The notes under the pieces were generated by a model, which was not told the origin of the DNA, did not search any database, and saw only the letters and a list, made by a program, of their open reading frames with translations. Below, one piece after another: positions 26,992-49,400 of a stretch of DNA of 64,000 nt. The translations under genes and the position numbers were made by a program. Source of the DNA: Pavona decussata (lineage: Eukaryota); contig CDRNST010000143.1 of assembly GCA_977016875.1 (NCBI GenBank), forward strand, positions 434,001-498,000, read 5' to 3'. Numbering within the stretch: the first letter of the stretch is position 1; each line of letters starts with the position of its first letter.

Positions 26992-27943
26992 TTTTTGAAC
27001 TTCAAAGAGCTGGCGCCGCGAAACTGAACCAATGAGCGTCGAACTTTTATCCAATAAAACGTAAGCGCCTTGTTTCCATTAAACTTGGAATAAATCAGAA
27101 CTTAATAGCTGCAGTTGTAAAGAAAGTATGTGTACTGTAAGTTAAATTATAAACTCAACGGAATGTAGAACGCTTTTAATGTTAGATAGAGTTATAACAT
27201 TTTTTATCCACTTTCTTTGAAACGTAGGCTCAATTTTTAGAGAACATGTGTTTAAAGGGATACTGTACACCCCAAAACAACAGTTTAAATACAGAAAGCT
27301 TATGGTCTAAATAAAAGATATTATTAAAAATGGAGTTCGTTCTCCCTTTTTTTTTCCTATAAAAAATACGAAAAAATTCTCGTCATGGAATTCTAACTCG
27401 CACTTAGGCGAAAACCGGAAATGCCGTGGAAAGAACAACTCGCCAAACCTTTTTCAGCTATATTTCCCTGTATTTCCTTAGCAAGATTGGGTGATTGGCT
27501 TGGTATTAGAATTTCAAAATAAATGTATAGTTCGTGTTTTGTGGGAAAATCCTTAACGAGTGTTTATATAGGACAGTTTATAAATGGCACAACAAAACAT
27601 GGTGCTTTTTCTCTGTAAAATTCCCCTTGTTCAGACACTGGCGAGGTTAAACCAGGCCACTTCAGTCAGGAAAATAAGACAAGGAGCCAAACTCGCTCGT
27701 GTTTCCGACTCAACAAGAATCTTGTTCTGTGACAGTTTAGAATATTGCATTAAAGAAGAGAATCAGTGTGCTTTCAACAAACGCCATGTCAAGGAAACTT
27801 TTTATCCTTTTACAGGAAAAATAAAAACTTTAATCCCACTTTCGCATGTTAAAAGTAGGTTACTTATGCAGTTCAATTAGTTTTGAAACCCTCTCTGTCC
27901 CTGAAACCTTTGAGAAGCGTAAGTCCTCAGTACAATGTCAATA

Positions 27944-28040
27944 GGGGGCAGGGATGGCGCAGTGGTGAGAGCACTCGCCTCCCGCCAATTTCAGTAGTCC
28001 AGGTTCGATTCCTGGCGTTGACACGACATGTGGGTTCACT
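27944..28040 (+). mobile_element. tRNA-derived SINE head (truncated)
   Basis: Pol III A box TGGCGCAGTGG and B box GGTTCGATTCC. Corresponds to the longer copy at 32202. Confidence 0.8.
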
Positions 28041-28256
28041 ATTGGGGCGATAACAAACAACCTGGACGGCTGGAACGGGTTTGATCACGTACTAGATAGA
28101 AGTGAGTTTTTGATCCGTGAAAGAAATGGAGCGATCAACTGTAAACGACTGTCAGACGGTGGAGGTGTTCGAGGCGATTCAAATCTATCCCAGAAATCAC
28201 ATCATCCCAGAGTACCAAAGTAGCGCCAACTTGACATGTAACCAAGATTTGGTTAA

Positions 28257-29024
28257 GGTGGCCGAACACAGTTTTCAAGTATACCGGTGTTAGTAAACAT
28301 TAATTGAAAACTACATACTTCTGAGTACCCGAAATTAGCATGGTGCAAAATTAACAAAGAAGGAATAAATTTTGATACTTCTTGTTGAGCAAGGTGCCGT
28401 TGCCATGGCACCACAGCAAGCTATTAACCGTCCATAAATAAAGGTTTTCCTTAATTTTTAGAAAATGCACTCGTTAGATTTTTTCCATTTTTTGTATCCA
28501 GACAAACTCACAAAATACTGACATAGTGACGCTGCTTTCATGTAATTTTAACAGAGATCTCCTGTAAATGTTGGTTTTGCACTTTAATGTTTTTTGAACA
28601 CACCTTCTGTTAGATTTTGTTTTTTGTTTGTAGGCGAGTTACGCTTTTAGAGAACTACTGTTTTGTCAAATTTCACGAAATTCTAACGAGCGGTTCCTTA
28701 GAAAACAGTTCATTTCCATTAAAACAACCAGTCACAATTTTTTGATCAAATGCGCATGCGTGGCTTTCAATTAGATTTTCTCAGCAAAGATGAAAGTGTA
28801 CAAAAAGGCTTAGCTCTTCGTGAACTCACTTTTTTTGTTCGGCGATAAATGAAGAAGGATTCACAAACAAGAAACTGAGTTATTTTAAGAGCTAAACTTA
28901 CATTTGTGATTTATTTAGTATAAAATCGAGGGATCGATAGTATTTGCTTACCACAACCCTAGCGCGCGCTTAATAGCATCACTAACAGAATCTGTAAAGC
29001 GCGCGCAAACTGTGTTCGGCCACC
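28257..29024. mobile_element. Kolobok-type non-autonomous transposon (768 bp) with TTAA target duplication
   Basis: TTAA|GGTGGCCGAACACAGTTT ... AAACTGTGTTCGGCCACC|TTAA. The empty site with a single TTAA is seen in copy 2 at 33929-33932. Confidence 0.92.
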
Positions 29025-29132
29025 TTAAATAAAGGCCATGATGAATTTTACATGGCTTGTGATTACTTTGCCGTTTAAAAGTCAACACTATTTGACGTTG
29101 AGGAGATTTTGAAAGGTGCATGTTGTTAACAA

Positions 29133-29886
29133 TTCCAAGAAAAGCTGTCTGTTAACAAAAAATATTTCCTATTTCCGAGAAAAGCGGATGGAGACCAGTT
29201 CAGTCCGACACATGTTTTAGTACCGCAACATGTTTTAATCATCATCAGCTTTTAGTGTTTATATTTAGTTATGTAGTGTAATTTATCCACCAAAATACGA
29301 TGCAAAATAAATGTGAAAATACATCAGGCTTTGAGCGAGTTTGCAAAGGGATCTAATTAATCGCAGAGTAAACTTCCTCGAAATGGACAGACCGGAAGTC
29401 GTTGTAGACATTCCGAGAAAATCAGATTCGGAATTTTCTGATTGGTCAGTCTGCTCAAGTATGACTCAACTTTTAAAGTTTCTTTAATGCTTTCATATAC
29501 TCTCATTTCATCTTAAATTTGATTCTTTTCTTGAAGCAACCAGGATATTTTGGGATCTAATGACGGAAAATATGGTTATTTGCCGAATGAGGCTTCGCTC
29601 ATATTAACAGGTAAGTCAGACTGACAACGAAAATTTTTATCAGAACACAATGCAATCATACGACCATTCGGGGGGAACCAAATGATAATGTTGCTATCAT
29701 AAAACTTTTAGCTATCACTTGTACACTATGAATGGTTGCTTCCGATCATTTTCATAGACATTTATGTGAGTTTGGTTGATAAACGTTTTTGAAAGCTTAC
29801 AACTGTGACTTGTAGACAATTCTCGGAAGACGATCATCGAGTTAAGGCGTCGGAAATATGCATAAATGATGGATTTTTTCCTAGAA
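29133..29886. promoter_or_regulatory. Putative STAT-responsive promoter/enhancer: six GAS sites, ETS and CCAAT
   Basis: TTCNNNGAA at 29133, 29173, 29374, 29411, 29820, 29878; ACCGGAAGT at 29391; ATTGG at 29441; splice donor CAG|GTAAGT at 29611. Confidence 0.65.
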
Positions 29887-30455
29887 AGGTCACAGAGGGC
29901 CTATGGCTTGCTTGTTTCCCTCTTCTTAGCCATCGCCTTCTGTAGACTTATGCCTGGTGGACTCTAATCCTGTATTCTTACATGTAGCTCTTTTATTGGT
30001 TTAATAGGCGTTCAGTTCGATAAACAAGCAAGCAGCTGCAGGTTATTTTCAGCAGCTGATGGACCGTAATTTTCGAAACTGTGTTCTTTATTATGTCTTC
30101 CAAAGGACATCTAATGGATCCGATCGATAGGCTCGGCCAAATAACTGCTTGAACAGACTTACAAATCATCAGCGAAATTCAATTTCACTATCTTCGTAAT
30201 GCTGCGACAATTTTCAACTTTTCAATTTCTCTCGGGCACGAGAAAGGCCGGCTAATTAGCAGCTGGAAATTGTGAGGAAATAAGATTTCGTTTCCCAAAA
30301 GGTTACCCTATTTTAATAAATATTCAGCTAAACAACCGAACAGATCGCAAAGCTAACTTAAATGATCTCAGATGGCTAAATTAGACGATAAAAAAATTAA
30401 TTAATTTTATTCAAGAAGTACTTTTACTGCAGTGAATTGTATGCTTTCGAAACTA

Positions 30456-30556
30456 AGTTTCAAGTTTCAAGTTTCAAGTTCAAGTTTATTCAAAAATTCA
30501 AAAATTTAGCAAAAAAGAGAGACTGGCCCACAGTAGGTAGCGAGAGCTAATCTAGG
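30456..30556 (-). mobile_element. Short LINE 3'-end insertion with (AAACTTG)n tail
   Basis: (CAAGTTT)x4 followed by TTTATT; absent from duplicate copy 2. Confidence 0.5.
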
Positions 30557-32201
30557 GAAGTCAGACATGCAACTGTTAAACGATCTGGGGAAACAGAAAC
30601 AAAAAAACTAACGAGAAAACCAATTTTCTTTCACTGACCTTAATTTGCTCGTGGTGTTCCTGAAATTTGAGCTTCGATTACGTGTGTGCTTGTTTTACAA
30701 GGTACTTTGGAAAAACTACTCTCCAGTATTCTGCTTAAAGTGTTGCTCATATTTACCCGTTGTGTCAGGATTGTCTCGATGGCTCAGATTCTCGTGGCAG
30801 CGTAACGGTAGGACGAGCATTCATTCAAGTACTACTCATAGATTCTAAAGGGAAAAGGGCGACAGTTACAACAGTATCTCAGCCAATAATGTTGGAGAAT
30901 ACCTGCCCCTATCTTTTCTTTTCTCTAGCCATTTACAAGTTTATGGACAATGGAGTAGACTTGACAATGAATTGGCAAAGTGCCTTCATCGCTAGGTTGC
31001 AACTTCATAAAATCTGATTGTGTTGACAATCTGTGTGTACGGTCTGCATGATGCTCAAAGATTGCAATGAAAAAATCAACTTAAAGACAATTATATTGTA
31101 CGGCATTGAAAATGCAGGGCCAAAAGATAATGAAAAGTTTTTAATGTTCTGAATTGTTTCCTTGGCAACCGAAACTTAATCTTCCCCTTGGATTTGTTGG
31201 TGGATCTTTCATAAACTGAAATGTAGCATCAGCTAGCTATTAGTTCAAGAATTGCTTGTTATAAATTTCATGTACATGTATTCATACAACTCCTAGTCTT
31301 GATACAATCCTGAGTTAAAACCCTCTGTGCATGTATGGAAAGGAGTAAAAAGAAAAAGCAAAGTGAAAGAAACTTCTTTGCTCTGATTTAATTCATACGT
31401 AACACTGAAACAAAGACATTATCCAAAATGCAACACAATGTCGAAAATCTATATTCAATTTTGACCTGTTCAAGTGACTGACAAACTGACTGAATTGCTG
31501 ATTAACTGGTTAGCTTGCTGGCTGACTGACTGACAAAATATATGGCCTGCTCACTGGCTAAGTAACTGGCTGGCTGGGGAGCTACCCAGGTCTCCCCTTT
31601 TTTTATCTCCCCTTTTTCCGTCATGGGATTCGAACTCGCGCTAAGGCCGAAAACAGAAATGACGTAGAAAGAAGAACTCACCAAACCATTTGCAGCTACA
31701 TTTACCTGTATTTCTTTAGCAACTGATTGAGTGATTGGCTTGATGTTAAAATTACAAAATAAAAATGTATAGTTCGTATTTTGTTGGAAAATCCTTAACG
31801 AGTGTTTATACATGCATGGCAGTTTATGATATAAGGCACTACAAAACATGGTGCTTTTCCTCTGTACAATTCCCCTTGTTCAGAGATTGGCGATGTTAAA
31901 CCAGGCCATTTCAGTCAGGAAAAAAGGACAAGGGGCCAAACTCGCTCATGAATGTTCGCGGCTCAAAAAGATGCTTGTCGTGTGACAGTTTAGAATGTTG
32001 CTTAATTAAAGAGGAGAATCAGTGTGCTTTCAAAAAAAATTCATGTCGAGGAAACCTTTTATCCTTTTACAGGAAAAATAAAAACTTTAATAACAATTTC
32101 CCTTGTTAAAAGTAGGTTACTTCTGCAATGCTATTAGTTTTGAAACCATCTCTGTCCCTGAAACCTTTGAGATGCGCTTAGTCTTTGGTACAATGTCAAC
32201 A

Positions 32202-32838
32202 GGGGGCAGGGATGGAGCAGTAGTGAGAGCACTCGCCTCCCACCAATTTGGCCCGGGTTCGTTTCCGGCGTTGATGCGAAATGTCGGTTCATTTTGTTGT
32301 TAGTCCGAGGGTTTTTCTCCAGGTTTTTTCCAGTACGTTTTCCTCCCTTCACAAAATCCAACACACTTCCACATTCCAGTTAGACCCACAATGCACGGAC
32401 AGCTTTGAAACGAGTTCCTTAAAGGGGACTGAAGTATCACGAAAATTTGCTGTCATTTCAAAACCCCAAAATGTTTGAATGTCAGCAGAAACAACGAAAT
32501 AATTGTCAAGTTTGTGAAAAATTATCACCCCAGTGCAATAAAACCGTCGATTAGTGCCTCTTGCCAGAGACAGAGTAGGCCGGTATGGATTGAAACTTGA
32601 AAAATATTAGGCTAATGTTTTTCAAGTTTTGTTTCCAAATGCACCAGAACAGATCACGAGTTGTTTCTTTCAAGAACTGAGTTGATTTCAGTCCTCTCGT
32701 CATTCTAGAATTATTTGGCTGGTGATTGAAGGTCTTATTTCATCATTTTTAACAAAAGATATCAAAAACCCCATGATACTTCCCCGTTAAGACCTCTTTG
32801 GTGCTGCGTGGGTGAACAAATTACGTTTACGTTTTACA
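32202..32838 (+). mobile_element. tRNA-derived SINE interrupted by a TTAA-flanked MITE (32423-32786)
   Basis: A/B boxes at about 32213-32267 and tail GTGGGTGAACAAATTACGTTTACG. Insert TTAA|AGGGGACTGAAGTATCACG ... CATGATACTTCCCCG|TTAA. Confidence 0.75.
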
Positions 32839-34053
32839 TGCCCAGTACTTCGTAATGCGTTTGACTTGTGAGGGATGTAAAGTAATGGCTAACCATTTTT
32901 CCAAAAGCGTAGAGTAAGGTTATGGATAGAATTTTCCCAACGTCGCTGAAGGCGAGGTTGAAAATAATTGCTTGAAAAAAAAAGCAGAGATGAAAATAAT
33001 TACTATGTTTTGACTGAGGAAGAATCAATGTGTTAAATAATACTGAAGAAAGTTTTACAGCTATGTAAATGTCTGTTCAGGGGGAAGCTGAAAAGTGTAA
33101 AATTCGAGTTCTCTCTTGGTGAAATCCGAGCTTCGGGTAGGGTGACCCTTTTTCGTGGTTTTCTGCCGTTATATGGAATATTTCAAAAAAACTAACCTAA
33201 TATCTTTACTTACTTACCTAGGCCTTCAAACTGACATAGTATGCATGAGCGAAATCGAATTTTTGACCGTGACCACTTTTTTTTTTTCATTCTGTTCGAT
33301 GTATACTGACACTGATTCTTAATACTACATTCAGCTGAAGATGGTTGCTTAATTTCAAATATCAACGCTAGTTTTTCAGGGGGTTTTTTTTCTAACCCTA
33401 ACAGTGATCAGCCTTAAATTTATCCTTGTAACATTAATGCCTATTCAAATCCCTTTGGTCATGACAGTAAGGTTACAATCACGCAACATAAATTCTTTTG
33501 ATATTGGTTTTTGGTTTATATTTTCAACAGTGCTTTTATGAGAAAAGTATGGAGACAAGATAGGAGAATTTGGTCTTTCTTGTAACAGGTTAAAGAAATA
33601 ACTTAAAGCGGGTTTTCGTGGTTGGAATGTACTTAGAAACAAATTTTTCGTATTTTTCGTAGCCCTAACTTGGCATGTAACAAAGATTCCGTTAAAAGAA
33701 AAACCTTTGATCGATAAATTTTACATTTTACGACCCGGTTGACTGGAACGGCTTCGATCACTTACTAGATAGAAGTGGGTTTTTTTGATCCGTGAAAGCA
33801 ATGGAGCGATCAACTGTAAACTACTGTCACACAATATAAAGGCGTTCGAAGCGATTCAAATCTATCCCACAAACCACATCATCCCAGCGTACAACCCAGC
33901 CCTAACTTGGCATGTAACAAAAATTTGGTTAAATTAAGACCACGATGAATTTTACATGGCATGTGATTACTTTGCCGTTAAAAAGTCAATACTATTTGAC
34001 ATTGAGGAGATTTTAAAAGGTGCATGTTATAAATAATCCTGACACTTAAACTA

Positions 34054-34803
34054 TTCCAAGAAAAGCTGCCTGGTAACTAAAGAAATGTTCCTATTTCCGA
34101 GAAAAGCGGATGAAGACCAATTCAGTCCGAGACATGTTTTAGCACGTTCAACATGGTTCATCGTCATCAGCTTTTAGCGTTTATATTTAGTTATGTAGTG
34201 TAATTTATCCACCAAAATACGATGCAAAATAAATGTGAAAATACATCAGGCTTTGAGCGAGTTTGCAAAGGAATCTAATTAATCGCAGAGTAAACTTCCT
34301 CGAAATGGACAGACCGGAAGTCGATGTAGACATTCCGAGAAAATCAGATTTGGAATTTTCTGATTGGTCAGTCTGCTCAAGTATGACTCAACTATTAAAG
34401 TTTCTTTAATGCTTTCATATACTCTCATTTCATCTTAAATTTGATTCTTTTCTTGAAGCAACCAGGATATTTTGGGATCTAATGACGGAAAATATGGTTA
34501 TTTGCCGAATGAGGCTTCGCTCATATTAACAGGTAAGTCAGACTGACAACGAAAATTTTTATCAGAACACAATGCAATCATACGACCATTCGGGGGGAAC
34601 CAAATGATAATGTTGCTATCATAAAACTTTTAGCTATCACTTGTACACTATGAATGATTGCTTCCGATGATTTTCATAGAAATTTATGTGAGTTTGTTTG
34701 ATAAACGTTATTGAAAGCTAACAACTGTGACTTGTCCACAATTCTCGGAAGACGATCAACGAGTTAAGTCTTCGGAAATATGAATGATGGATTTTTCCTA
34801 GAA
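34054..34803. promoter_or_regulatory. Second copy of the putative STAT-responsive module
   Basis: TTCNNNGAA at 34054, 34095, 34296, 34333, 34742, 34795; ACCGGAAGT at 34313; donor GTAAGT at 34533. Confidence 0.65.
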
Positions 34804-36924
34804 AGGTCATAACTCAGAGGGCCTATAGCTTGCTTATCTCTCTCTACTTAGCCATTGTGGTCTGTAGACGAATGCCTGGTGGACTATAATTCTGTACATC
34901 TTAGCTCTTTTATTTATTTAATAAACATTCAGTTCGATAAACAAGCAAGCAGCTGCAGGTTATTTTCAACAGACCGTAGCTTTGTACACTGTGTTCTTTA
35001 TTATGTCTTCCAAAGGACATCTAATGGATCCGACGGATAGCCTCAACCAAATAACTGCTTGAACAGACCTATAAATCATCAGCGAAATTTAATTTCAAGC
35101 TAGGTTCGTAATGCTGGGCAATTTGGAACTTCAGTTCAATTTCGCTTGGGCACGAGAAAGGCCGGCTTATAATATCTTATTTTGGACGGGCAACAGCAGT
35201 TCCGAAATGTGAGGAATCCCAAAATGGTACGCTATTTAGAAAATATTCAGCTAAAACAACCGAACAGATTGCAAACCTAAGGCCCAATGAAACGATCTGG
35301 AAAAACAGAAGTAAACAAGCTAAATCAATTTTCTTAAATTTACCTAAATTTGCTCGTGGTGGTGCTCCTGAATTTTGAGCTTCGATAAAGTGAGTGTGTT
35401 TGTTTTACTAGGTACTATAGAAAAACTGCTCTCCAGTTCGTCTGCTTAAAGTGTTGCTAAAACTTACCCATTGTGTCGTGAACCTAATTTGAGTCTCGAT
35501 GGCTCAGAGTCTAATGGCAGGGTTACTTTAAGACGAGTATACATTTAAGTACGAGTATAAATTCTATAGGAAAAGGTATGACAATTGATACTAGTAACAG
35601 TATTTAAGCTTAGCCAACAGTCTTCGAAAATATCAGTCTCCTATGTTTTCTTTTCTCTACACGTTTACAAGTTTGTTGACAATGGATTAGACTTGACAAT
35701 GAATTGGCAAAGTACTTCTATAGATTGCAATGTTACAAAATCTGATTGTGTTGAGAATCTATGGGCACGATCAGCTCAAAGATTGCAATGAAGGAATCAA
35801 CTTGAAGACATTCAATCATTTTGCACGGCATTGAAAATTCCTCTGCAGAGCCAGAGGGTAGTGAACATTTCCACGGCAGCCAAAAGTTAAAAAACATCCC
35901 CTTGGAATTTTTGGTGGGTCTTTCATTAAGTGAAATGTTATTATTATTAGTTCAAAATTTCTTTGTTGTATTCCATGCATTCATATAACTCCTGATCTTC
36001 ATACAAACCTGAGTTCAAATCGTGTGTGCGTTCGTGGAGTGGAGTAAAGAGAAAACTAAAAAAACTTCTTTGCACTGATGCTGCTGGAAAAAAAGACATT
36101 ATGCATAATGCCATACAATGTCCAACATTGACCAATTTGAGGGATGTCTTTGTCCGCACAATTGGAATTTGTTATCGACCTGGGTTGTTATATTTAAAGA
36201 CGACTTACAAGGCTCAAACGGCAATGAAATTTTATTAACACACGTGGTAAGAATTGATAATAAGTAAAAAGGACAGGATCCCTTGATTGACCGACAAGCT
36301 AACTGACTGTCTGATGAACAGATAGATTCACTGACTGAGTGACTAACTTACTGACTGGCTTGCTAATAAACTGGCTAGCTTGCTGGCTGACTGGCAGAAT
36401 GATTGGTCTGCTGACTGGCTTACTAACTGGCTGGTTGTGGAGCTGACTAACTGACTAATTAAATAGTTTGCTGGTTGGTTTGCTGACTGCNNNNNNNNNN
36501 NNNNNNNNNNNNNNNNNNNNNNNNNNNNNNNNNNNNNNNNNNNNNNNNNNNNNNNNNNNNNNNNNNNNNNNNNNNNNNNNNNNNNNNNNNNNNNNNNNNN
36601 NNNNNNNNNNNNNNNNNNNNNNNNNNNNNNNNNNNNNNNNAGTTTCAGACTTACTGACTGACTGATGGACTGAGCAACTGAGTAATAAATCAAGAAAGTG
36701 TATGATAAGAAATGAATGAACTTAAAAAAGCTAAATGAGTATGATCAGTTGCCAAAACGTAGCCAGTAGAAATCAAAAAGTTCATTATCCTGTCTGTTTT
36801 TTGTTCTACAAAATCTGTAGATGCCTAACTAAGTTATTTTTTGTGCACACTGTATCCCTGTATGGCATCTCTTTTCTTATTAGACGTTTAAATCTTAATT
36901 TATTAGCTGGTGCTAACCAGGAAC

Positions 36925-37041
36925 TCTACCACTACAACCACAACCATCACTATTATCATCACTGTGTCTACCACTATATCTACCACTTCCAGTACCACTG
37001 GTACCATAACCACCACTTCCATCATTACCACTACGGCTACT
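36925..37041. repeat. Degenerate (ACC/ACT)n trinucleotide repeat
   Basis: Thr-rich/His-rich translation; runs into an N-gap. Confidence 0.7.
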
Positions 37042-37450
37042 NNNNNNNNNNNNNNNNNNNNNNNNNNNNNNNNNNNNNNNNNNNNNNNNNNNNNNNNNNN
37101 NNNNNNNNNNNNNNNNNNNNNNNNNNNNNNNNNNNNNNNNNNNNNNNNNNNNNNNNNNNNNNNNNNNNNNNNNNNNNNNNNNNNNNNNNNNNNNNNNNNN
37201 NNNNNNNNNNNNNNNNNNNNNNNNNNNNNNNNNNNNNNNNNNNNNNNNNNNNNNNNNNNNNNNNNNNNNNNNNNNNNNNNNNNNNNNNNNNNNNNNNNNN
37301 NNNNNNNNNNNNNNNNNNNNNNNNNNNNNNNNNNNNNNNNNNNNNNNNNNNNNNNNNNNNNNNNNNNNNNNNNNNNNNNNNNNNNNNNNNNNNNNNNNNN
37401 NNNNNNNNNNNNNNNNNNNNNNNNNNNNNNNNNNNNNNNNNNNNNNNNNN

Positions 37451-39699
37451 AAAGAAAAATTTTCAGAAAGAAAAAACAAAAGAACTCGATGAAATATCAT
37501 CAAATCCTGACAAATCATTGTTCTGGAGTTGTCTTAAATCGATAGATGATACAATCCCAACAAAAATCCTCCTTCAATACCAGAAGACAAATGGTTAGAA
37601 CACTTTCAATATTTACACTCCGACGAGCCAAAACCATCTACACATCAAGAAAAAATTTATAATGAGCTACAACAATTAGAAAAAGAAAAAGACCAACTTA
37701 ACTCCTTAGACAAAGTAATAACTCAACAGGAAATACGTCAAGCTGTGAAAAAATTAAAGAATAAGAAATCGCCCTTTTCCGACAGAATAAGGAACGAAAT
37801 GATCAAAGCGAGCCTTGAAACACTAATGCCTCTTTACATCAAACTTTTCAATCATATCCTAAAATCTGGAAAGATGCCAGATGTATGGTGCCAAGGCCTG
37901 ATAACCCCCATTTACAAATCTGGTGACAAGAATGATCCGACAAACTACAGGGGCATCTGTGTATCAAGTTGCCTCGGAAAACTGTTCTGCTCAATCTTAA
38001 ATCAACGTCTACACTCTTATTTAAAAGAAAACAAAATATTACATAACTCACAAATTGGCTTTCTGCCTGAAAACCGCACTGCAGACCATGTTTTTACTCT
38101 TCGAGCCCTGCTAGATAAATACGTTCACTATCACAAAGAAAGGGTCTATGCCTGTTTCGTAGATTTCCGCGAGGCTTTTGACTCCGTCTGGCACGTTGGT
38201 TTATTTTATAAGCTACTCGGTGCTGGCATTGGAGGACAATTTTACAATCTAATTAAAACTCTTTATTGTAATTCTTCCTGTTCTATAAGAATTGGAGACA
38301 ACAAAACACGATCTTTCTCGTACTCCAGGGGTGTCCGTCAAGGGTGTATTCTAAGTCCTCTGTTATTCAACTTTTATATTAACAATCTGCCATATTCATT
38401 TCAAAACGCGTTTTCTGATCCATTTGTCCTCCCAAATGGAAGGAAAATAAACTCATTTCTGTATGCTGATGATTTAATCATTCTGTCGAGATCCAAAACA
38501 GGATTGCAAAACTGTTTAAATACGCTATCTTCTTACTGCAAATCATGGATGCTAAAAATCAATCCTAAGAAGACGAAAGTAATGATCTTTCAGAAACGCT
38601 CAAAGAAATCCGTTGACATTAATTTTAAAATAGACACCGAACCTGTTGAAATTGTTCAGGAATACACTTATTTAGGAACTCGTTTAACCCCAACAGGAAA
38701 TTTCACTCTTGCGTTAGATCACTTAAAAGAAAAGGCCATGCACGCCTTCTCTAACATCCAAAAACACACACTCCTCAGTAAACTAACTCCCAACACAGCA
38801 TCTCAGATCTTCGACACGATGATATTCTCGATCTTAAGCTATAAAAGTGAGGTTTGGGGTATGTACACGAAGCAGGAGTTCAAAACATGGGATAATTCCC
38901 CATTAGAAAAAGTACATTTAAAGTTTTGCAAACGCTATTTGGAGGTAAAAAACAAAGCCTCTAACCTAGCATGTAGGGCTGAGTTAGGGCGATATCCATT
39001 ACTTATTGCAATAAACCAAAAAAGTATGAAATACTTTGTTTACCTAAACAATAAGGAGAATGACTCTATCGTTAAGCAATCTTTTCTGATGTCAAAACAT
39101 TTACACTCCATTAATAATTCCGGTTTTTACTCCAATTTTATGGGCATGTTAGAAAAATACTATTCATCTGATCTAAATCCTGAAAATTTTAGCAATGAGA
39201 CAATAAGGCAAATTGAAACTAATATGAAAAACAAGTATCTGCGTTTCTGGCAACACAACCTTGAACACTCAAGTTCTATAAGGTTTTCAAGAATGAATAC
39301 TCTTCGTCTAATTATTTAACTCATTTAAGAAATTTTCCTGATAGACGAAACCTAGTTAAGTTTAAATTAAGTAACCACAAACTCAGAATTGAAGCTGGTA
39401 GATATCAGAAAGATCATCTTCCTAGAGAGTTAAGATTATGTCAGTTGTGTCAATCAAATCAAGTGGAAAATGAAACTCATTTCTTGTTTCTCTGTAGTTG
39501 CTACTCTTTACAGAGGCAGACATTCTATGAAGACATAAGTAAAATGATACCTGATATTCAAACGAAATCGACATCAGACATTGTGAAACTACTGATGAAC
39601 TCTAAAGACTATAATGTAAACAAACTGGTTATTAAGTTTATTTTTTCATGTATGATTATACGTGACAGGCTATTATTGGATATTGATGATGTAACTTAG
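37451..39699 (+). mobile_element. Non-LTR retrotransposon (LINE, CR1/L2-group-like) ORF2 fragment: reverse transcriptase plus C-terminal Cys/His motif, frameshifted
   Basis: RT motifs NYRGI, SQIGF, FVDFREAFDSV, GVRQGCILSPLLF, LYADD, YTYLG; downstream CQLC..ENETHFLFLC. Frame changes near 37560 and 39270. Both ends abut N-gaps. Confidence 0.92.
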
Positions 39700-41999: not shown

Positions 42000-42060
42000 T
42001 GACGTCAGCATTCCCAGAAAAACGACCGGAAGTTTGAATCATTGTTAATTTTTCCTAGAA
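42000..42060 (+). promoter_or_regulatory. Putative ZNFX1 proximal promoter (CRE-GAS-ETS-GAS)
   Basis: TGACGTCA 42000-42007, TTCCCAGAA 42011-42019, ACCGGAAGT 42025-42033, TTCCTAGAA 42052-42060, about 1.3 kb before the first coding exon acceptor. Confidence 0.6.
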
Positions 42061-43439
42061 TCACATTTAGTAGAAACCGTACAATTCTGATTTCTGATTA
42101 TCCCTGCTTGTGCCAACCCGTGAAAGTTTTTGGCTCTCAGTTAATTTCAGTTAAATGACTTGACTTTGTGAATGTGTGAAATAACAGGGGCCTCTTCTTG
42201 CTACTGCGCAATACGGTCTGCGCATCTCCGGCACTGGAGATTGCCTCCCGAATGAAGCAGTGTTTGTGCGTGGGTTATGAATATTCGGGAAAAGAAGATA
42301 TTAGCAAACGCTCAGATTAAAATCCAAAATGAACATTGGGGATACGCAGGCATTTCCCAAATATAATTAAGGTTGAATTTGGAAAAAAAAAATGCATGTC
42401 ATACGTTATCAGGCATTTTTAAGTTTTTAGAATTATTACTAATTAATTATCTCTAGTTTTCTTTGTCCATTTAGTAGCCCTTTCTAAGACCTATTTTCGC
42501 GCTGTCAAAAAGCACACAAAAATACCTACACCGTCGACTCTAAGCAAAATACTTTACATATTGGCTCCTCGGTTCCCAGATCGTTTGGAACTCTTTTAAA
42601 GACATATTTGTATATGCACATAAGACAGTTTAATCTTCTCTGATGCTAATTAGCTGAAAATTTAAGTTACAGAACGTTTTAGAGGACAGAATCTAATTCC
42701 AGAATTTACAAGCTCTTGTTTCAGTGTAGAAAAATGCTAAAGGAACTTTTTTCGCATTTTTAAAGCGATATTTTCCCGTTCGAAAAAGGAATTAGTGTTC
42801 CAGTGTTATGACATTCTGAGCTAGCATTTTGCAGAAGGAAACTTTAGATTTTCTTTAGCAAAAAAATCAAGATTTCTGAGGCCCTCCGAACAGATCTCCA
42901 CGCAAATGAACCGTTGCATGGGTGGCCCTGAAATAACTCGGAAAAGATGTGAACTACGAATGAATCATGTTCAATGCCTTGATAGGTCAGTAAGTAGAGG
43001 ACGCCATTATATTGGTATCGCAGAATCATGGATTCGAATCCGAACAAGCCAGAATATAAAATTGATTGATTTAACAACGTCATTGCATGTCATTGATACA
43101 GTAACTTGACTCTCTCAGTAAGTAACCACCAATATAATCTCCATTAAATCAATCATTTCAATGTAATCATTTCAAAGGAAAATGTTTGCAACCAAACACT
43201 TTTTTATTTGTGAATATTGTTTTCATTGATTATTTGCCACACTCTGTGTTTGGAATGTCTTCGTTTTTCCTACTGCTGAGTGGTTCCTTATAAAAGATTC
43301 AAGAAAGGTCTGTTATTGTTCGTAAATTAATTGCTTATGCATCCATTTCTCAGGGACATGGACCCTTCCCCTACCAAGAGATTTTCGGCTCTCTGCTGGT
43401 AAAAGAACAGACTGCGGCCGGAGACAGGTGCCCCAAAAG

Positions 43440-46400
43440 ATGCTTAAAGCTGACTCCAACGATTTGGCTGCTGATGATGAAAAAACGGCTCAAAGAAAAA
43501 GAACCCCAAGCTGTTCTTCAATTGACACAGGAACTCATAGACTTCAGGTTGGCGCTAACAGCCAATCAGACATGATGAAAGATGAATCATTACAAAATAA
43601 ACTACTTGATACTTCAGAGGAAAGTGGGGACCAAAAGGGGACTCGAAAACAAGGAGAAAGGCGTGCGCAAGAACTGAGACGTGAAAGGAAGAAGAGTTCT
43701 GTGGTGAACAACAACGACAACAGCAGACTGCCACAAAATGGTCTTCAAGATTATTCACCACGAATAGACAATAAAAGCAAAGATGGGACAGAAGTAAAAG
43801 GAAAAACACGACCAAAAAATAGAAGTGAAACAACGAAGAGTTTGGTCGTAGACATCAACAATAACGCACTAGGACAGAAGGTTAATGAAATACCAGGAAA
43901 AGAAGATAAGCAAGAAACGAAAAAACATTGTGAGCCGCGACACCCACAAAACAGACGTGATATCGACGCCAAGGACCGAGTAGCACCAAACAGCAGTGAA
44001 AAAAAGTTACCACAAAAGGGTTTACCTCAGTCCGCTGACATTGAGGTTCAAGATGAGTCTTCTGAGAAAGATGAAAGAAAACGAAGACGTCCAAGAAATA
44101 GAAATGCAAGAAAGAAAAGTGGGGCTGCAGATAACAGAACCGACAAGTCACTGCCACATACGGACAGTGCGACTGGAGAAAGAAAAGATGGGCAAGATGG
44201 TACTAAAAAGCAAGACCAAGAACGCCCAAAAAGTAGAAGTGAGACAACGAAAACTGGTGGCGTTACGAAGGACGCCAAAATAGCGCTGGATGACGCTACA
44301 GGGATAGAAACTGAAAGCCAAAATGAGACAAGAAATCTTGGACAAACACGTTCGCAAAGTGGAAGTGAGACAAGGGAGGGATTATTGATGCGAAATCGTG
44401 GCAAACGAAGTCCACAAAATAAAATAAAAGGAAAGGAAAGTGTGGTTGCAAACAACAGTGACAGCAAATTGTTAACAAAGATTGGTCTGACAGGAGATGA
44501 CAAAACGCAAGATGGGGCTAGAAAGCAGGAGGAAAGACACCCAAAATATAAAAATGACGTAAAGAAAACAAAGGAACATGTTGCAGTAAAGAGCAGTGAC
44601 AACACAGGTACATTGCCAAAAAACAATGGTGCGACAGGAAACGATGAAGGAAGACAAGAGAGAACAAAAAAACAGGATCAGAGACGCCAAGAAAATAAAA
44701 ATGACGTAAAGAAAACAGAGGAACATGTTGCAGTAAAGAGCAATGGCAACACATGCACATTGCCAAAAAACAATGGTGCGACAGGAAAAGATGAAGGAAG
44801 ACAAGAGAGAACAAGAAAACAGGATCAGAGACGCCAAGAAAATAAAAATGACGCAAAGAAAACAGACGAGCATGTTGCAGTAAAGAGCAATGACAACACT
44901 TTGACAAAAAACAATGGTGCGACAGGAAAAGATGAAGGAAGACAAGAGAGAACAAGAAAACAGGATCAGAGACGCCAAGAAAATAAAGATGACGTAAACA
45001 AAACAGAGGAACATGTTGCAGTAAAGAGCAATGACAACACTTTGACAAAAAACAATGGTGCGACAGGAAAAGATGAAGGAAGACAAGAGAGAACAAAAAA
45101 ACAGGATCAGAGACGCCAAGAAAATAAAAATGACGCAAAGAAAACAGAGGAACATGTTGCAGTAAAGAGCAATTACAACACATGCACATTGCCAAAAAAC
45201 AATGGTGCGACAGGAAAAGCTGAAGGAAGACAAGAGAGAACAAGAAAACAGGATCAGAGACGCCAAGAAAATAAAAATGACGCAAAGAAAACAGAGGGAC
45301 ATGTTTCAGTAAAGAGCAATGATAACACTTTGACAAAACATAGTGGTGCAACTTGGAAAGATGAACGAAGACAAGGTGACGTAGACAAAACGGAAGAACA
45401 TTTTCCTGGAAAGAACAGTGACAGCTCATTGGCACGGCAAAACAATGGTACGACAAGTAGAGATGAAGGAAGACAAGATGGAGCTGAAAAACAAGATCAA
45501 AAGCGACCAGAAAATAAAAATGACGTAAAGAAAACAAGGGAACACACATTTACAAAGAACCATGGTGCGACAGCAAAAGATGAAGGCAGACAAGAAAGAA
45601 CTAGAAAACAAGATCAAAGGCGACCACAAAATTTGAATGACGTAAAGAAAACAGAGAAGCATGTTGCAGTAAAGAGCAGTGACAACACATTGGCACGGAA
45701 AAACAATGGTACGACAAGTAAAGATGAAAAAAGACAAGAGAGGTCTAGAAAGCAAGATCAAAGGCCACAGGAACATGTCGCAGTAAACAGCAGTGACAAT
45801 TCATTGACACGAAAAAACGATGCTACGACTAGTAAAGATGAAGGAAGAAAAGATGGAACAGAAAATAAAAGTAAAGTAAAAGCAAGTTTTGCTGTAAACA
45901 ACAACACATTGCTGCAAAGGACTGCTGCAACAGAAAAAGCCGATGAAATGCATAGGAAGCAAGAGAGGGGTAAAAAAGGCTCGCAGACTAAAAGTGAGCT
46001 AAAGAAAGCAGAGGAAAGTGTTACTGTAAACAGCAGCAACACTACATTGTCAAAAACAGATGATGCAGGAGGAAAAGATGTAGGGAGACAGGATGGGTCG
46101 AGAGATAGAAAACAAGATACAAAGAACCCGCAAAACAAGAATGGAGTAAAGGAGAGTGTTCCTGTAAACAGCAACAATGCGGGACGGCTTCCAAAGAAAG
46201 GCGCAACAGGAAAAGATGAAGAAAGACACGATGGATCTAAAACACAAAATCAAAAGCGCCCACAAAACAAGAGTGAAGTAAAGAAAAGTGCTCCTGCAAA
46301 AAGCAAGAACACATTGCCACAGAAATGTGGTGCGGCAGGAAAAGATGACAAAAAGCAAGATGCGACTAAAGAAGAAGTTCAAAGACACCTCCGATATAGA

Positions 46401-49400
46401 AGTGAGACAGTAAAAACAGAAGAAAGTAATATTGTGAACAGCAGCAACACATTCCCACCAAAACATGGGTTGACAGGAAAAGATGACGAAATACAAGATG
46501 GGACGAAAAGACGAGATCGAAGGCGCCCGCAAAATGAAAAGGAACAGAAGAACAGTGTTCCTATAAAACGTAACACATTGCCACAAAAAGATGGTTTGGC
46601 AGGAGAAAATAATGAAACGCAAAACAAGACTGCAGACAAAGATCAGAGTCGCCCAGAGAAGAGAAGTCAAGCAATGAAAAGTGCTGTTGTGAACAGCAAT
46701 GGCAACGCGTTGCAGCAAAATGGTGTGCAGGGTGGTGCAACAGGAAAAGACAGTAGTAGAGAAGATGAGGCTTTTAAAAGAGAACAGATGCATGCGCCCA
46801 GTGGAAGTGAAACAAAGAAAAGCAATGAGAATGGCAATCAAGAACAAAGACACGCACAAAATGAGAGAGAGTTAGTCCAAACACGAACTGCCAAAAGGAA
46901 AAAAAAGAAAACTGTTCACAAAGACGATTTATGGACCAAGGCCATGGAAGATCTCTTGGACAAGAGTCCGGAGGAAATTGTCAATGGCTTGATCTCGGAA
47001 GATTTCCCTTCGCTTGGAAAGAAACAAAAGATGAAAGATGATGCGGTGATCGTTCTTATAAGACTTCTGGCAAAAGCTTGTCATTGTGAATCTGATATCG
47101 GTTTAGAGCAATTCTTTACCTCTTTACAATCATCCTGGATTCTCACTGCTAGACTTGGAGCGTTTCTCGACCAAGCAATCAGGAAGAAATCGAAAGACCC
47201 ACAAATCCAAAGACTGAATTTGGATACAATCAGAGACATAGTAACACTACTCACAGAAGTTTTCAACAGATTCCCGAATTCATGCTCCAATTCACTATTA
47301 GTCAAGTTGCATAAAGCTAGAATGGCTCTTGTAAACTCTGGAACGCAATTAGACGAAGGCGTCTCCTTTGCTCTTCAAGAACTAACAAGACTAAGGAAGG
47401 AAGACAATTCCGCAGGAAGAAAACAACAAAGGGGCAGATCTCCTAGAGTTGGTAGAGTATCAGTTCAGACTTGTTTAGCGTGTTTGTTTGTTTGTTTTTT
47501 GGCCTGTTGTCTGAAACCTTTCACCCTCACAGCCAAATGACCTCAAATAGTAAATGTTGAAGTGATGATTCTAGTTTAAGTCTAGATCTGGGAACGACAT
47601 GTTACGATGTCATCGTTTCAACTAAAGCCGCTCTTCAGCAGTACGTTCCTCTGGTGTTGTTTTCGCAAGAGCATTTACATTCAGATAACGTAATGATTTT
47701 TTGTCTTTTTCGTGAATCTAAGTTCAAAGGCGCTCAAACGATGCGTACATTTAAAAGCGAGAAGTTCGATGCTCATTCAATAATGCTGATTTCTCATGTC
47801 TTGTCAGGGATGATCACCGATGCAAAACAAGACCCTCCCGAGAATTTCCGCCAGTTGAGTGTGATTCCGACCCCTTGTGATATCACTGACGTCAGAAACC
47901 ATGACGAAGGACTCTTTCTCAGAAAGAACAAAGTCAAGGGGAAGTACTACAATGAGGAACATTATTTAGACGTCCAGTTTCGGCTTCTTCGCGAGGACTT
48001 CTTGAGGCCCCTTCGTGATGGCATCCAGCTGTTAATGGACATGCCTACCGCATATCCAAGAGATGATGATCGCTTAAAGGATGTTAGAATGTACGATAAT
48101 GTCAGGATATTGAGCCCGGTATATACATCCAATGGAGTCAGATACAAGGTCAAATTTGACGTTTCAACGTTTGCTGGAGTGCAATGGGAGAACAGTAAAA
48201 GGCTGACCTTTGGATCCCTACTGTGTTTGTCTAAGGACAATTTCAAGAGCTTTACCTTTGCCTCCGTCGCTGACAGAAAGTTGGAGAATGTTAGAAGGGT
48301 AAGGAAGAGAGTTACAGAAATATCTTTCTAACGCTTTTAACTGTTTGTTCCTTGCCAACTATCAAAATAGGATACAAACAAATAATTTAGCATAACCGGA
48401 GGATCAACCTATTCAACAAAGAAATTAGGTAAAAAGGTTAACATCAAGCTTGTTGGCTTGTGAGTTCGACATTTTTCCATGCATGCACTCCCAGAGAATC
48501 AAGTGTATCGATAATTAGACCGACCTTATATAGCCAGCTTTTAAACCATTACCATGCTGGCGATGACTGCTCATACTGCTACACTTGTCTAGCAACTGAT
48601 TCGAACGAGGTTAACATTTGATGTACCGGATCTCGCTTTGAAGAGAGTGCGTAGTCTCTTGGAGGAATTCGACAGCATATTGGTATGAGGTATATTCTTT
48701 GGTTCATCGCTCAGTTTTTTCCTTGTTATTTGCATTTTAGGGGCTGATTGAAGTCCGATTTGTTTCGCCTTCCAATGAAGCTCGACCAAGAACAGGGGAC
48801 ATATGCCAAATGGTTGAATCCATAGCGTTCTTTGAGGCTTACCGTCCAGTGCTGGAGGGGCTAAAAATGATGTCTGCCAGAGATTTCCCCTTCAAGGTAT
48901 AGACAGTTTTAAATACAAGGCTGAAATTGACATGGGGCTAGTATATTTAGGTTTCCCTTGATCTAAAAACAACAAAATCACGTTAAGACAAATAACGAAA
49001 CAATGTAGCGCAAACTGACTCTCGCAAGCGACCCTCTAAAATTTGGGAATTCGTACCTGGCTTAGTTCTTAGTTTAGAGCAAGTTATACTTTTATATTCA
49101 GATTCAATGCTCTCGTTAAAGACCTCCTTCTTTGGTCTCTAAGGTGAGAATTGAATATTTAGGTTTCATTTCAATATAGAAAATGAACTAAAATTTGTCC
49201 TATTTTTAAATTAGAGTTACATAGTGTATGTGAAGAGTGACGATGACGTCAATCCACCAGCCTATCTCAAAAAACATGATCAGCAAGTGGTATTCGACTT
49301 CACTCCTATAATGCCCGGCAAAGCTAAGGAAGAGACCCCCGCGAGGTGAGGAAAGCAGTATAGCCTATGTATTTATCTACAACCCCGCATCATTTCTCAC

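What the first reader, a model, noticed from the sequence alone, without database searches (positions are those of the whole stretch)
29133..29886. Dense STAT (GAS) site cluster, all six sites preserved in both duplicate copies
Seen: six TTCNNNGAA sites in about 750 bp (my rough base-composition estimate is about one per 3 kb). All six are identical in copy 2 (34054-34803) although four of them lie outside the homogenised core, amid substitutions and indels. The centre is GAS-ETS(ACCGGAAGT)-GAS-GGAATTTTCT-CCAAT(reverse), followed by a perfect CAG|GTAAGT donor. No downstream coding exon is visible in either copy. Inference: duplicated immune-inducible promoters or enhancers, either alternative ZNFX1 promoters, orphans of lost paralogues, or lncRNA promoters.
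Basis: partly seen in the sequence, partly recalled or inferred. Interest (0 to 1): 0.7.

Follow-up and report, generated by a model that had tools for sequence, protein, structure and literature searches.

The report
Conserved STAT-site promoter of coral ZNFX1
Two tandem copies of the promoter and non-coding first exon of a stony-coral antiviral gene (ZNFX1) carry six STAT-type DNA sites that are the best-conserved elements of this region in four other coral assemblies and in a neighbouring sister gene, which makes them a strong but still unproven candidate for STAT control of an antiviral gene in an animal without interferon.

Summary
Six TTCNNNGAA sites lie at 29133-29886, and all six recur in copy 2, four of them outside a 478-bp homogenised core.

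The module is not a transposon: the genome holds two near copies and one diverged paralogous copy. It is a transcribed promoter with a non-coding leader exon. RNA-type contigs from two studies end exactly at the predicted donor and continue for 726 and 1320 nt elsewhere. They cannot tell copy 1 from copy 2.

The strongest evidence is comparative:
- The same module lies 4-7 kb upstream of the orthologous ZNFX1 gene in four other coral assemblies, as a single copy, and upstream of the next ZNFX1 paralogue.
- Overall identity falls to 45-60%, yet of 783 gapped hexamers in copy 1 only five survive in all five comparison sequences. These are five of the six GAS sites; the sixth survives in four.
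- The central GAS-ETS-GAS unit keeps a 37-bp spacing in all five species.
- All 11 ZNFX1 paralogues in this genome have close GAS pairs upstream.
- The genome shows a STAT gene.

Not shown: STAT binding, inducibility and the splice acceptor. The first ZNFX1 coding exon is likely on synteny and circumstantial evidence.

Earlier notes of this scan report similar GAS promoters on other DNA of this genome.

The parts
27381..31583 (+). Copy 1 of the tandem segmental duplication
   Evidence: Self-BLAST and MAFFT alignment with copy 2. The flanks evolve faster than those of copy 2.
31619..36444 (+). Copy 2 of the tandem duplication. It carries an insertion of about 1.4 kb of repeat-derived DNA at about 32300-33730.
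   Evidence: Its flanks are 90-91% identical to the single copy of related assembly spA, closer than to copy 1.
29257..29734 (+). Homogenised core of copy 1: proximal promoter, leader exon and the first 124 nt of the intron
   Evidence: 4 differences in 478 bp against 34179-34656, with flanks at 86-88%. It includes intron sequence, so gene conversion is more likely than selection.
34179..34656 (+). Homogenised core of copy 2
29133..29181 (.). Distal GAS pair of copy 1 (TTCCAAGAA at 29133, TTCCGAGAA at 29173)
   Evidence: Site 29173 is kept in all five comparison sequences and site 29133 in four. The block GAGAAAAGCGGAT is identical in copy 2, spB and paralogue L015, and partly changed in spA, spC and spD.
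29374..29419 (+). Central GAS-ETS-GAS unit of copy 1 (TTCCTCGAA, ACCGGAAGT, TTCCGAGAA)
   Evidence: Only 12 such composites occur in 602 Mb and the control pattern gives 0. The 37-bp GAS-to-GAS spacing is kept in five species.
29440..29460 (+). Reverse CCAAT box (GATTGG) and the conserved CTCAAGTA block; likely transcription start region
   Evidence: Conserved in spA, spB and L015. In spD only the CCAAT box is kept; in spC the CCAAT box is mutated and CTCAAGTA is not recognisable. The start site itself is not mapped, because contigs cannot show it.
29482..29610 (+). Non-coding leader exon (minimum extent seen in RNA contigs). The donor GT is at 29611-29612.
   Evidence: Contig X4 record 17 lies on 29482-29611 and then has 726 nt elsewhere. 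Stops occur in all frames and no ATG-initiated frame crosses the donor. GGTAAGT is invariant in six sequences.
29820..29886 (.). Intronic GAS pair of copy 1 (TTCTCGGAA, TTCCTAGAA), +210 and +268 nt from the donor
   Evidence: Both are kept in all five comparison sequences, with changed spacers.
34054..34803 (.). The same six GAS sites in copy 2 (34054, 34095, 34296, 34333, 34742, 34795), a seventh at 34673, and ETS at 34313-34321
   Evidence: The seventh site is shared with spA.
34414..34532 (+). Leader exon of copy 2 (minimum extent). The donor GT is at 34533-34534.
   Evidence: X2 record 16 (1420 nt) and X5 record 32 end here. The covered part is identical to copy 1, so the copy of origin is not resolved.
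42003..42060 (+). Second, non-homologous module: CRE (TGACGTCA), GAS, ACCGGAAGT, GAS, 1.3 kb upstream of the large exon
   Evidence: Conserved in spA and spB, but not recognisable in spC or spD. Its role is unresolved: proximal promoter or intronic enhancer.
43354..47540 (+). First large ZNFX1 exon. The acceptor AG is at 43352-43353, the ATG at 43440, and the end of the open frame at 47540. It is the candidate splice partner of the leader exon.
   Evidence: The link is circumstantial only (corrected). Orthologous large ORFs follow the module in spA-spD.

Best explanation
The region is the promoter and non-coding first exon of the ZNFX1 gene in this window.

Anatomy. A core promoter is built from an ETS site, a reverse CCAAT box and an initiator-like block. 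Three pairs of TTC-N3-GAA palindromes surround it: a distal pair, a central pair that brackets the ETS site at a fixed 37 bp, and a pair in the first intron.

Proposed mechanism. The palindromes are binding sites for the coral's STAT protein. Activated STAT dimers bind the pairs and, with ETS and NF-Y-type factors at the start site, raise transcription of an antiviral RNA helicase and ubiquitin ligase gene. This resembles GAS-driven interferon-stimulated genes in vertebrates, but in an animal without interferon.

Duplication. In this species the whole cassette was duplicated in tandem, giving two alternative first exons. A recent gene conversion homogenised 478 bp across the promoter, exon and intron start.

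Shown here:
- transcription and donor use of at least one copy;
- the duplication and the conversion tract;
- orthology and paralogy of the module;
- strong purifying selection on the TTC and GAA half-sites with a free spacer;
- presence of a STAT gene.

Inferred:
- STAT is the binding factor;
- the promoter is inducible;
- the leader exon splices to the ZNFX1 coding exons;
- both copies are active.
For: Transcription.
- Contigs from three RNA-type runs of two studies end at the donor, and two of them continue for 726 and 1320 nt elsewhere.
- The module has two copies in 602 Mb.

Paralogue.
- It aligns with the module 6 kb upstream of the next ZNFX1 paralogue at only 53-55% identity.
- Five of six GAS sites keep their position while the spacers change. 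Half-site positions are 32/36 identical, against 48% elsewhere.

Orthologues.
- Loci in four other coral assemblies have one copy, 4-7 kb upstream of the large ZNFX1 ORF, in conserved synteny. spA also has the GPCR neighbour.
- Across copy 1, copy 2, spA and spB, 36/36 half-site positions are conserved against 75% elsewhere, p=4e-5.
- Across six sequences, the only five gapped hexamers of 783 kept in all are GAS sites.

Specificity.
- The composite GAS-ETS-GAS occurs 12 times in the genome and 0 times in the control. Four of the 12 lie in this 36-kb ZNFX1 tandem.
- All nine other ZNFX1 paralogues have a close GAS pair within 10 kb upstream: 10 pairs in 90 kb, 0 in 120 kb of background, and one per 78 kb genome-wide.
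- The enrichment is specific to N3 spacing: 39 sites, against 2-8 for N0-N7. This count is partly ascertained.

STAT and literature.
- Collinear STAT_alpha and STAT_bind exon hits lie on C8.
- ZNFX1 identity: PF25396.
- STAT and ETS motifs are enriched in poly(I:C)-induced Nematostella promoters (PMC8476169).
Against: - No binding, accessibility or induction data exist for this locus.
- In Nematostella, knock-down of the single STAT did not reduce induction by 2'3'-cGAMP (PMC8713801), so STAT control of cnidarian antiviral genes is unproven.
- The acceptor was not seen. Protein searches for transcript contigs carrying the ZNFX1 N-terminus found nothing.
- The contigs do not cover the one exon difference between the copies, so activity of both copies is not shown.
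- The runs are only guessed to be RNA. The splice-like breaks argue that they are.
- In the most distant species the alignment is partly anchored by the motifs themselves. The collinear spacings give independent support.
- The ETS G is changed in spB, and the CCAAT box is mutated in spC.
Confidence: 0.62

Rival explanations
1. The TTC-N3-GAA palindromes are functional but are bound by a factor other than STAT, for example a BCL6-like zinc-finger repressor or a cnidarian-specific dimeric factor. The promoter would then not be under STAT control.
For: Only the sequence is known. Vertebrate BCL6 recognises overlapping TTCCT(A/C)GAA sites (own knowledge). nvSTAT knock-down had no effect on the cGAMP response in Nematostella. 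The pair spacings of 29-62 bp are wider than the usual STAT tetramer spacing (own knowledge).
Against: Strict N3 specificity with a free spacer and conserved TTC/GAA is the classical STAT dimer signature. The preferred form TTCYNRGAA matches STAT5-type sites. A STAT gene is present.
Confidence: 0.2
2. The module drives a non-coding or other transcript rather than ZNFX1. The leader exon would splice to exons that are not part of the ZNFX1 coding gene.
For: The acceptor was not observed. A separate GAS-ETS-GAS module at 42011-42060 sits closer to the large exon and could be its own promoter. No N-terminal ZNFX1 product from transcript contigs was found.
Against: - In five species the module is the only conserved promoter-like element upstream of the same gene, with no other Pfam-bearing gene between.
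- The homologous module precedes the paralogue, whose first coding exon starts with an ATG right after its acceptor.
- The next exon starts with G, as both candidate ZNFX1 acceptors do.
- The 1420-nt contig would end within 2 nt of the start of the second run of repeated 31-mers in the large exon (first long one) if spliced to 43354.
Confidence: 0.13
3. The cluster is a chance accumulation of a common 6-of-9 motif in neutral duplicated DNA, and its identity between the copies comes from duplication and gene conversion.
For: The motif is frequent, one per 2.35 kb. A six-site cluster is expected tens of times per genome. Two of the six sites lie in the converted tract.
Against: Positional retention in four other species and in a paralogue at 45-60% overall identity; the sites are the best-conserved gapped hexamers of the module; the four-way test gives p=4e-5.
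Confidence: 0.02
4. The module is part of a transposable element or an assembly artefact, such as two haplotypes placed in tandem.
For: Assembly gaps and a LINE reverse-transcriptase ORF lie just downstream. Repeat-derived pieces flank the module.
Against: There are only two near copies in the genome. The copies differ by 12-19% with large indels in the flanks, whereas true haplotigs of spA differ by about 1%. The position is syntenic in relatives.
Confidence: 0.03

Closest known systems
Vertebrate GAS (gamma-activated sequence) elements in interferon-stimulated gene promoters such as IRF1, GBP and FCGR1; vertebrate ZNFX1 is itself interferon-inducible (own knowledge)
   Same: TTC-N3-GAA palindromes close to the start site and in the first intron of an antiviral gene. 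They co-occur with an ETS site, as in the FCGR1 GAS plus PU.1 arrangement. The half-sites are constrained and the spacer is free.
   Different: The animal has no interferon, and an upstream cytokine and kinase are unknown. A JAK-specific domain search found nothing, but that search is uninformative. There are six sites in three pairs with a fixed 37-bp GAS-ETS-GAS unit. No binding or induction data exist.
Clusters of STAT92E sites in Drosophila target genes such as Socs36E (own knowledge)
   Same: An invertebrate with a single STAT, and clustered TTCNNNGAA sites in promoter and intron.
   Different: The Drosophila clusters have been validated by reporters and ChIP. This one rests on conservation only.
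STAT, IRF, NF-kB and ETS motif enrichment in promoters of poly(I:C)-induced genes of Nematostella vectensis (PMC8476169)
   Same: A cnidarian antiviral programme with STAT-type and ETS-type motifs in the promoter, first exon and first intron.
   Different: That paper reports statistical enrichment with vertebrate matrices across many genes. Here a single locus is resolved site by site across species.
Tandem promoter plus leader-exon cassettes noted earlier by this scan upstream of a coral sacsin-like gene (s1-497898, s1-480637; not checked here)
   Same: Duplicated promoter and non-coding first-exon cassettes with conserved GAS sites upstream of a large stress or immune gene in the same genome.
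   Different: A different gene, three copies, and an E-box partner instead of ETS and CCAAT.

Membership tests
STAT-responsive (GAS-type) cis-regulatory module | TTC-N3-GAA palindromes, specifically with N3 spacing | tested here: met
   Copy 1 has six sites and copy 2 seven. In 12 ZNFX1 promoter modules, N3 occurs 39 times against 2-8 for N0-N7; the background is flat.
STAT-responsive (GAS-type) cis-regulatory module | Sites under purifying selection, with half-sites fixed and the spacer free | tested here: met
   36/36 half-site positions are conserved in the four-way alignment, against 75% elsewhere. Five of the six sites are the only gapped hexamers kept in all five comparison sequences.
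STAT-responsive (GAS-type) cis-regulatory module | The organism encodes a STAT with a DNA-binding domain | tested here: met
   Three collinear exon-level hits lie on the + strand of C8: STAT_alpha at 3616274-3616402, and STAT_bind at 3618126-3618185 and 3620373-3620489. Each is below the Pfam cut-off on its own; their order and co-location make the case.
STAT-responsive (GAS-type) cis-regulatory module | STAT occupies the sites, and transcription depends on STAT and on a stimulus | not testable with these tools
   No ChIP, ATAC or challenge data could be examined. Nematostella STAT knock-down had no effect on the cGAMP response (PMC8713801).
RNA polymerase II promoter with a non-coding first exon | Transcribed, with use of the canonical GT donor | tested here: met
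   Contigs of 856 and 1420 nt align up to 29611 and 34533 and then continue elsewhere. A third, 120-nt contig ends there.
RNA polymerase II promoter with a non-coding first exon | Mapped transcription start site | not testable with these tools
   Only contigs were available. Their 5' ends (29482, 34414, 34434) give the minimum extent of the exon.
RNA polymerase II promoter with a non-coding first exon | The first exon is joined to the downstream ZNFX1 coding exons | tested here: inconclusive
   The acceptor lies outside the stretch that was laid. The support is synteny, paralogue structure, the shared G, and a contig-length coincidence with a repeat boundary.
High-copy transposable element | Many dispersed copies in the genome | tested here: not met
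   Two matches in 602 Mb, and a syntenic single copy in relatives.
Tandem segmental duplication with a gene-conversion tract | Diverged flanks around a near-identical block with sharp borders that is not limited to functional sequence | tested here: met
   The core is 99.2% identical over 478 bp, including 124 nt of intron. The flanks are 86-88% identical, and the copy 2 flanks are closer to spA than to copy 1.

The most novel reading that the evidence does not exclude
Coral ZNFX1 genes are direct STAT targets through an ancient, rigid cis-regulatory grammar: three GAS pairs, one of which brackets an ETS site at exactly 37 bp. This grammar has been kept across coral lineages and across gene duplications. 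If so, the wiring of STAT to antiviral effector genes predates interferon, and this locus offers a defined, mutable enhancer with which to find the unknown cnidarian signal that activates STAT.
Probability: 0.45. Interest if true: 0.75.

Novelty: new member of a known kind. Interest (0 to 1): 0.62.

Why it matters
How animals without interferon switch on interferon-stimulated-type antiviral genes is an open question. In cnidarians the evidence for STAT involvement is limited to motif enrichment and one negative knock-down.

This locus gives a site-resolved, evolutionarily validated set of STAT-type elements in front of a bona fide antiviral sensor gene. It has a measurable leader exon and natural variants: two copies here, one copy in relatives. 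That makes the hypothesis directly testable with reporter, binding and challenge experiments.

It also adds to a growing list of GAS-wired gene families noted by this scan in the same coral, which suggests a regulon.

Tried and rejected
Transcript contigs carrying the ZNFX1 N-terminus.
- Word-index protein searches with the first 400 aa and the first 213 aa of the large exon found nothing.
- Exact look-ups of the two predicted partial products found nothing.

Other searches.
- STAT_bind at the default threshold gave nothing. It only became informative at a loose threshold combined with the STAT_alpha hits.
- The JAK-specific domain PF17887 gave no match, which is uninformative for an intron-rich genome.
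- Rfam gave nothing over 27000-43500.
- Literature searches for coral or cnidarian ZNFX1 with STAT found no site-level description.

Genes beside the other eight GAS-ETS-GAS composites (C1, C28, C76, C129, C320, C408).
- The 1.5-kb flanks already held contain no informative ORF.

Readings rejected.
- The kB-like GGAATTTTCT is conserved only among the close species, not in spC, spD or the paralogue, so I do not count it as a footprint.
- I first read as showing that both donors are used. I withdrew that, because the covered exon part is identical in the two copies.

Step left out.

Full report
OBSERVATION

The identical 9-mers recur at 34054, 34095, 34296, 34333, 34742 and 34795, and copy 2 has a seventh site at 34673.

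The centre reads GAS, then ACCGGAAGT, then GAS, then GGAATTTTCT, then GATTGG, followed by CAG|GTAAGT. By my count the exon ends at 29610 and 34532, and the intron GT starts at 29611 and 34533.

The window as a whole has 40 sites against 29.3 expected from shuffles. In 120 kb of randomly chosen genome the density is one per 2353 bp, with no preference for N3 over N2 or N4 spacing.

As a pure cluster statistic the finding is only nominally unusual. At least six sites in 754 bp arose in 1 of 300 Markov simulations of the window, so tens of such clusters would be expected by chance in 602 Mb. Density alone therefore proves nothing.

THE DUPLICATION

Self-comparison shows a tandem segmental duplication, copy 1 at 27381-31583 and copy 2 at 31619-36444.
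- Within it, 29257-29734 against 34179-34656 differs at 4 of 478 positions (99.2%).
- The flanks are 86-88% identical over aligned positions and carry many indels.
- The near-identical tract covers about 190 bp of promoter, the exon, and 124 nt of intron without a single change. A recent gene conversion explains that better than selection.
- Four GAS sites lie outside the tract. Perfect identity of four flank 9-mers has p of about 0.012, and retention of the half-sites p of about 0.04, given the flanks' own divergence.

The module is not a high-copy element: a 976-nt query finds exactly these two places in the genome. Rfam finds nothing in 27000-43500.

TRANSCRIPTION

Nine listed runs hold part or all of the 486-nt core, none on record as RNA. 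Five of them, runs guessed to be RNA, hold small shares of 0.09-0.16 of the sampled words, as expected if only the exon is present. I laid four of these on 29000-34999, with these results:
- An 856-nt contig lies on 29482-29611 and then has 726 nt elsewhere.
- A 1420-nt contig lies on 34434-34533 and then has 1320 nt elsewhere.
- A 120-nt contig from a second study lies on 34414-34533.

Unique DNA around the exon has no coverage. A break exactly at a canonical donor, with long continuation, is what spliced RNA gives. So the exon and its donor are real.

Three cautions apply:
- The covered part of the exon is identical in the two copies. The only exon difference, 29472 T against 34394 A, is not covered. 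The data therefore show that at least one copy is active, not both.
- Contigs cannot give the transcription start.
- The alignments run one base (G) past the exon end, so the next exon begins with G.

The exon has stops in all frames, and no ATG-initiated frame runs through the donor. It is a non-coding leader.

WHAT GENE IT SERVES

Downstream lies a ZNFX1 gene:
- PF25396 in the exon at 47654-48331;
- the helicase AAA_11 and AAA_12 domains;
- a LamG-like exon.

It is preceded by a 4.1-kb repetitive exon with its acceptor at 43353 and its ATG at 43440. A LINE reverse-transcriptase ORF and three assembly gaps lie between copy 2 and that exon.

The next gene on the contig is another ZNFX1 paralogue (L015; PF25396). 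About 6 kb upstream of its first coding exon lies a module that aligns with copies 1 and 2. That module has the same order of elements:
- a GAS pair;
- GAS, then ACCGGAAGT, then GAS;
- GATTGGTC;
- CTCAAGTA;
- an exon ending in GGTAAGT;
- an intronic GAS pair.

The paralogue's first coding exon begins with an ATG two bases after its acceptor. The homologous exon of the window gene does the same, with GG then ATG at 47808-47812. The ancestral structure is therefore a non-coding leader spliced onto an exon that starts with the ATG.

Both candidate acceptors in the window, 43354 (GGACAT) and 47808 (GGATG), start with G, as the contigs require.

One more circumstantial point:
- If the 1420-nt contig is spliced to 43354, it ends at 44673-44674.
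- That is within two bases of where the second run of repeated 31-mers in the large exon (the first long one, 34 words) begins (first word 44643-44673); a two-word run at 44610-44611 precedes it.
- Only 12 such runs exist in 4.2 kb, and a k=31 assembly would be expected to break there.

I regard splicing to the ZNFX1 exons as likely (about 0.75) but not shown. Attempts to recover transcript contigs through their protein products failed.

COMPARATIVE EVIDENCE

This is the core of the case.

How the orthologues were found. A protein search with the ZNFX1-domain exon found close relatives in other assemblies. Fetching their contigs gave orthologous loci in four of them:
- spA: L040 and L042, plus a haplotig L043;
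- spB: L041;
- spC: L045;
- spD: L046.

Each has a large ORF, the ZNFX1-domain exon and a LamG exon in the same order. spA also has the class C GPCR that lies upstream in the window. I do not know the species names.

Copy number and position. Each has a single copy of the module, 4-7 kb upstream of the large ORF, with no Pfam-bearing gene between. The duplication is therefore specific to the window's lineage, or was lost elsewhere. In the flanks copy 2 is closer to spA (90-91%) than to copy 1 (86-88%), and copy 1 has the longer branch.

Retention of the sites. Identity to copy 1 is 88% (spA), 83% (spB), 60% (spC) and 45% (spD), and 53% for the paralogue. All six sites are nonetheless present at collinear positions in all four species, and five of six in the paralogue, with the three spacer bases changing freely.

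Start-to-start spacings in bp, from the site positions:

| Sequence | Sites 1-2 | Sites 2-3 | Sites 3-4 | Sites 4-5 | Sites 5-6 |
|---|---|---|---|---|---|
| Window | 40 | 201 | 37 | 409 | 58 |
| spA | 41 | 201 | 37 | 408 | 53 |
| spB | 42 | 205 | 37 | 405 | 60 |
| spC | 31 | 200 | 37 | 411 | 62 |
| spD | 29 | 183 | 37 | 420 | 57 |
| Paralogue | site 1 half lost | 168 | 38 | 420 | 43 |

Two tests:
- Among copy 1, copy 2, spA and spB, 36 of 36 half-site positions are invariant against 75% of other positions (p=4e-5).
- I asked, for every position of copy 1, whether its own 3+N3+3 gapped hexamer recurs within three alignment columns in the other five sequences. Of 783 positions only five are kept in all five, and they are five of the six GAS sites. 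The sixth is kept in four.

The most distant alignments are partly anchored by these very motifs. The conserved spacings do not depend on the alignment.

Other elements. Also kept are CGGAA of the ETS site (the following G is changed in spB), the CCAAT box (mutated in spC) and GGTAAGT. The kB-like GGAATTTTCT is kept only among the close species.

SPECIFICITY IN THE GENOME

- The composite TTCNNNGAA-N(3-15)-CCGGAAGT-N(5-25)-TTCNNNGAA occurs 12 times in 602 Mb, and its reversed control occurs 0 times.
- Four of the 12 lie within 36 kb here: copy 1, copy 2, a non-homologous module at 42011-42060, and the paralogue's module.
- The genome has 11 ZNFX1 paralogues.
- In the 10 kb upstream of each of the other nine there is at least one pair of sites 9-60 bp apart. 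Most sit next to CCAAT boxes and ahead of an exon-like stretch, in several cases with a visible donor.
- That makes 10 pairs in 90 kb, against none in 120 kb of background.
- Genome-wide such pairs (gap 10-40) occur once per 78 kb: 7693, against 5141 for the control.
- In the 12 promoter modules, N3 spacing occurs 39 times against 2-8 for every other spacing from 0 to 7. This count is partly ascertained, because nine modules were centred on N3 pairs.

THE FACTOR

TTC-N3-GAA with fixed half-sites and a free spacer is the classical STAT dimer site (established knowledge for vertebrate STATs and Drosophila STAT92E). The commonest forms here (TTCTCAGAA, TTCCTAGAA, TTCCGAGAA) fit TTCYNRGAA.

The genome shows three collinear exon-level hits to STAT_alpha and STAT_bind within 4.2 kb on one strand of contig C8. 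Each is below threshold alone, but together they are convincing.

From the literature:
- Nematostella has a single STAT and no interferon, and STAT knock-down did not blunt the response to 2'3'-cGAMP (PMC8713801).
- STAT, IRF, NF-kB and ETS motifs are enriched in promoters, first exons and first introns of poly(I:C)-induced Nematostella genes (PMC8476169).

STAT control is therefore a reasonable but unproven assignment. A different dimeric factor remains possible.

VERDICT

The region is the conserved promoter and leader exon of a coral ZNFX1 gene, duplicated in tandem in this species and partly homogenised by gene conversion. Its six STAT-type sites are the most strongly conserved elements of the module.

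It is a new, well-resolved member of a known kind, the GAS-bearing promoter of an antiviral gene, in an animal without interferon.

Earlier notes of this scan describe similar GAS promoters at other ZNFX1 copies and at other gene families in this genome. I tested the ZNFX1 part myself and did not test the rest.

Noticed in passing
window 42003-42060: A second module, not homologous to the first: TGACGTCA (CRE), then TTCCCAGAA, ACCGGAAGT and TTCCTAGAA, 1.3 kb upstream of the acceptor of the large ZNFX1 exon. The CRE, the first GAS and the ETS site are conserved in spA and spB; the second GAS is lost in spA. It is not recognisable in spC or spD. It could be a proximal promoter or an intronic enhancer.
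   Followed up: partly
L012:1501-1537, L013:1501-1537, L014 (minus strand) = G000:C320:132763, C408:120208, C408:174935: Three related promoters carry GAS-ETS-GAS. In L012 and L013 an ISRE-like GAAGTGAAACT and TATAAAT follow; all three then have a short exon with a GGTAAGT donor. This is an ISG-like GAS+ISRE arrangement. The genes they serve could not be fetched.
   Followed up: partly
window 47808-47812 and L015:7899-7903: In both tandem ZNFX1 paralogues the ZNFX1-domain exon starts with an ATG two bases after its acceptor. The window gene could therefore also make an isoform that skips the 4.1-kb repetitive exon and starts at 47810.
   Followed up: no
window 29570-29610: The motif AAAATATGG in the leader exon, an upstream ATG about 40 nt before the donor, is kept in all five species (AAAATGTGG in the paralogue). 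The short ORFs it opens differ, so it may be a conserved uATG or a DNA or RNA element.
   Followed up: no
window 32200-32800 and 33400-33600: These stretches inside copy 2's extra 1.4 kb are covered by hundreds of RNA-type contigs at summed depths above 10,000, with many variants. They are fragments of highly expressed, high-copy repeats.
   Followed up: no
window 37745-39319: A 524-aa ORF with a reverse-transcriptase domain (RVT_1), bracketed by assembly gaps. It is absent from the orthologous interval in spA and spB, so it is a lineage-specific LINE insertion in the putative first intron.
   Followed up: partly
window 22418-25252: An intronless class C GPCR (ANF_receptor, NCD3G, 7tm_3; 944 aa). 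It is 95% identical at the DNA level and syntenic in spA.
   Followed up: partly
G000:C8:3616274-3620489 (+): A candidate STAT gene of this coral: exon-level matches to STAT_alpha and to two parts of STAT_bind, in the right order.
   Followed up: partly
G000:C1:607948-607987 and C1:619472-619533: Two related GAS-ETS-GAS modules lie 11.5 kb apart on contig C1. The second is followed by a further GAS and ATTGG. This looks like another duplicated promoter of this type.
   Followed up: no
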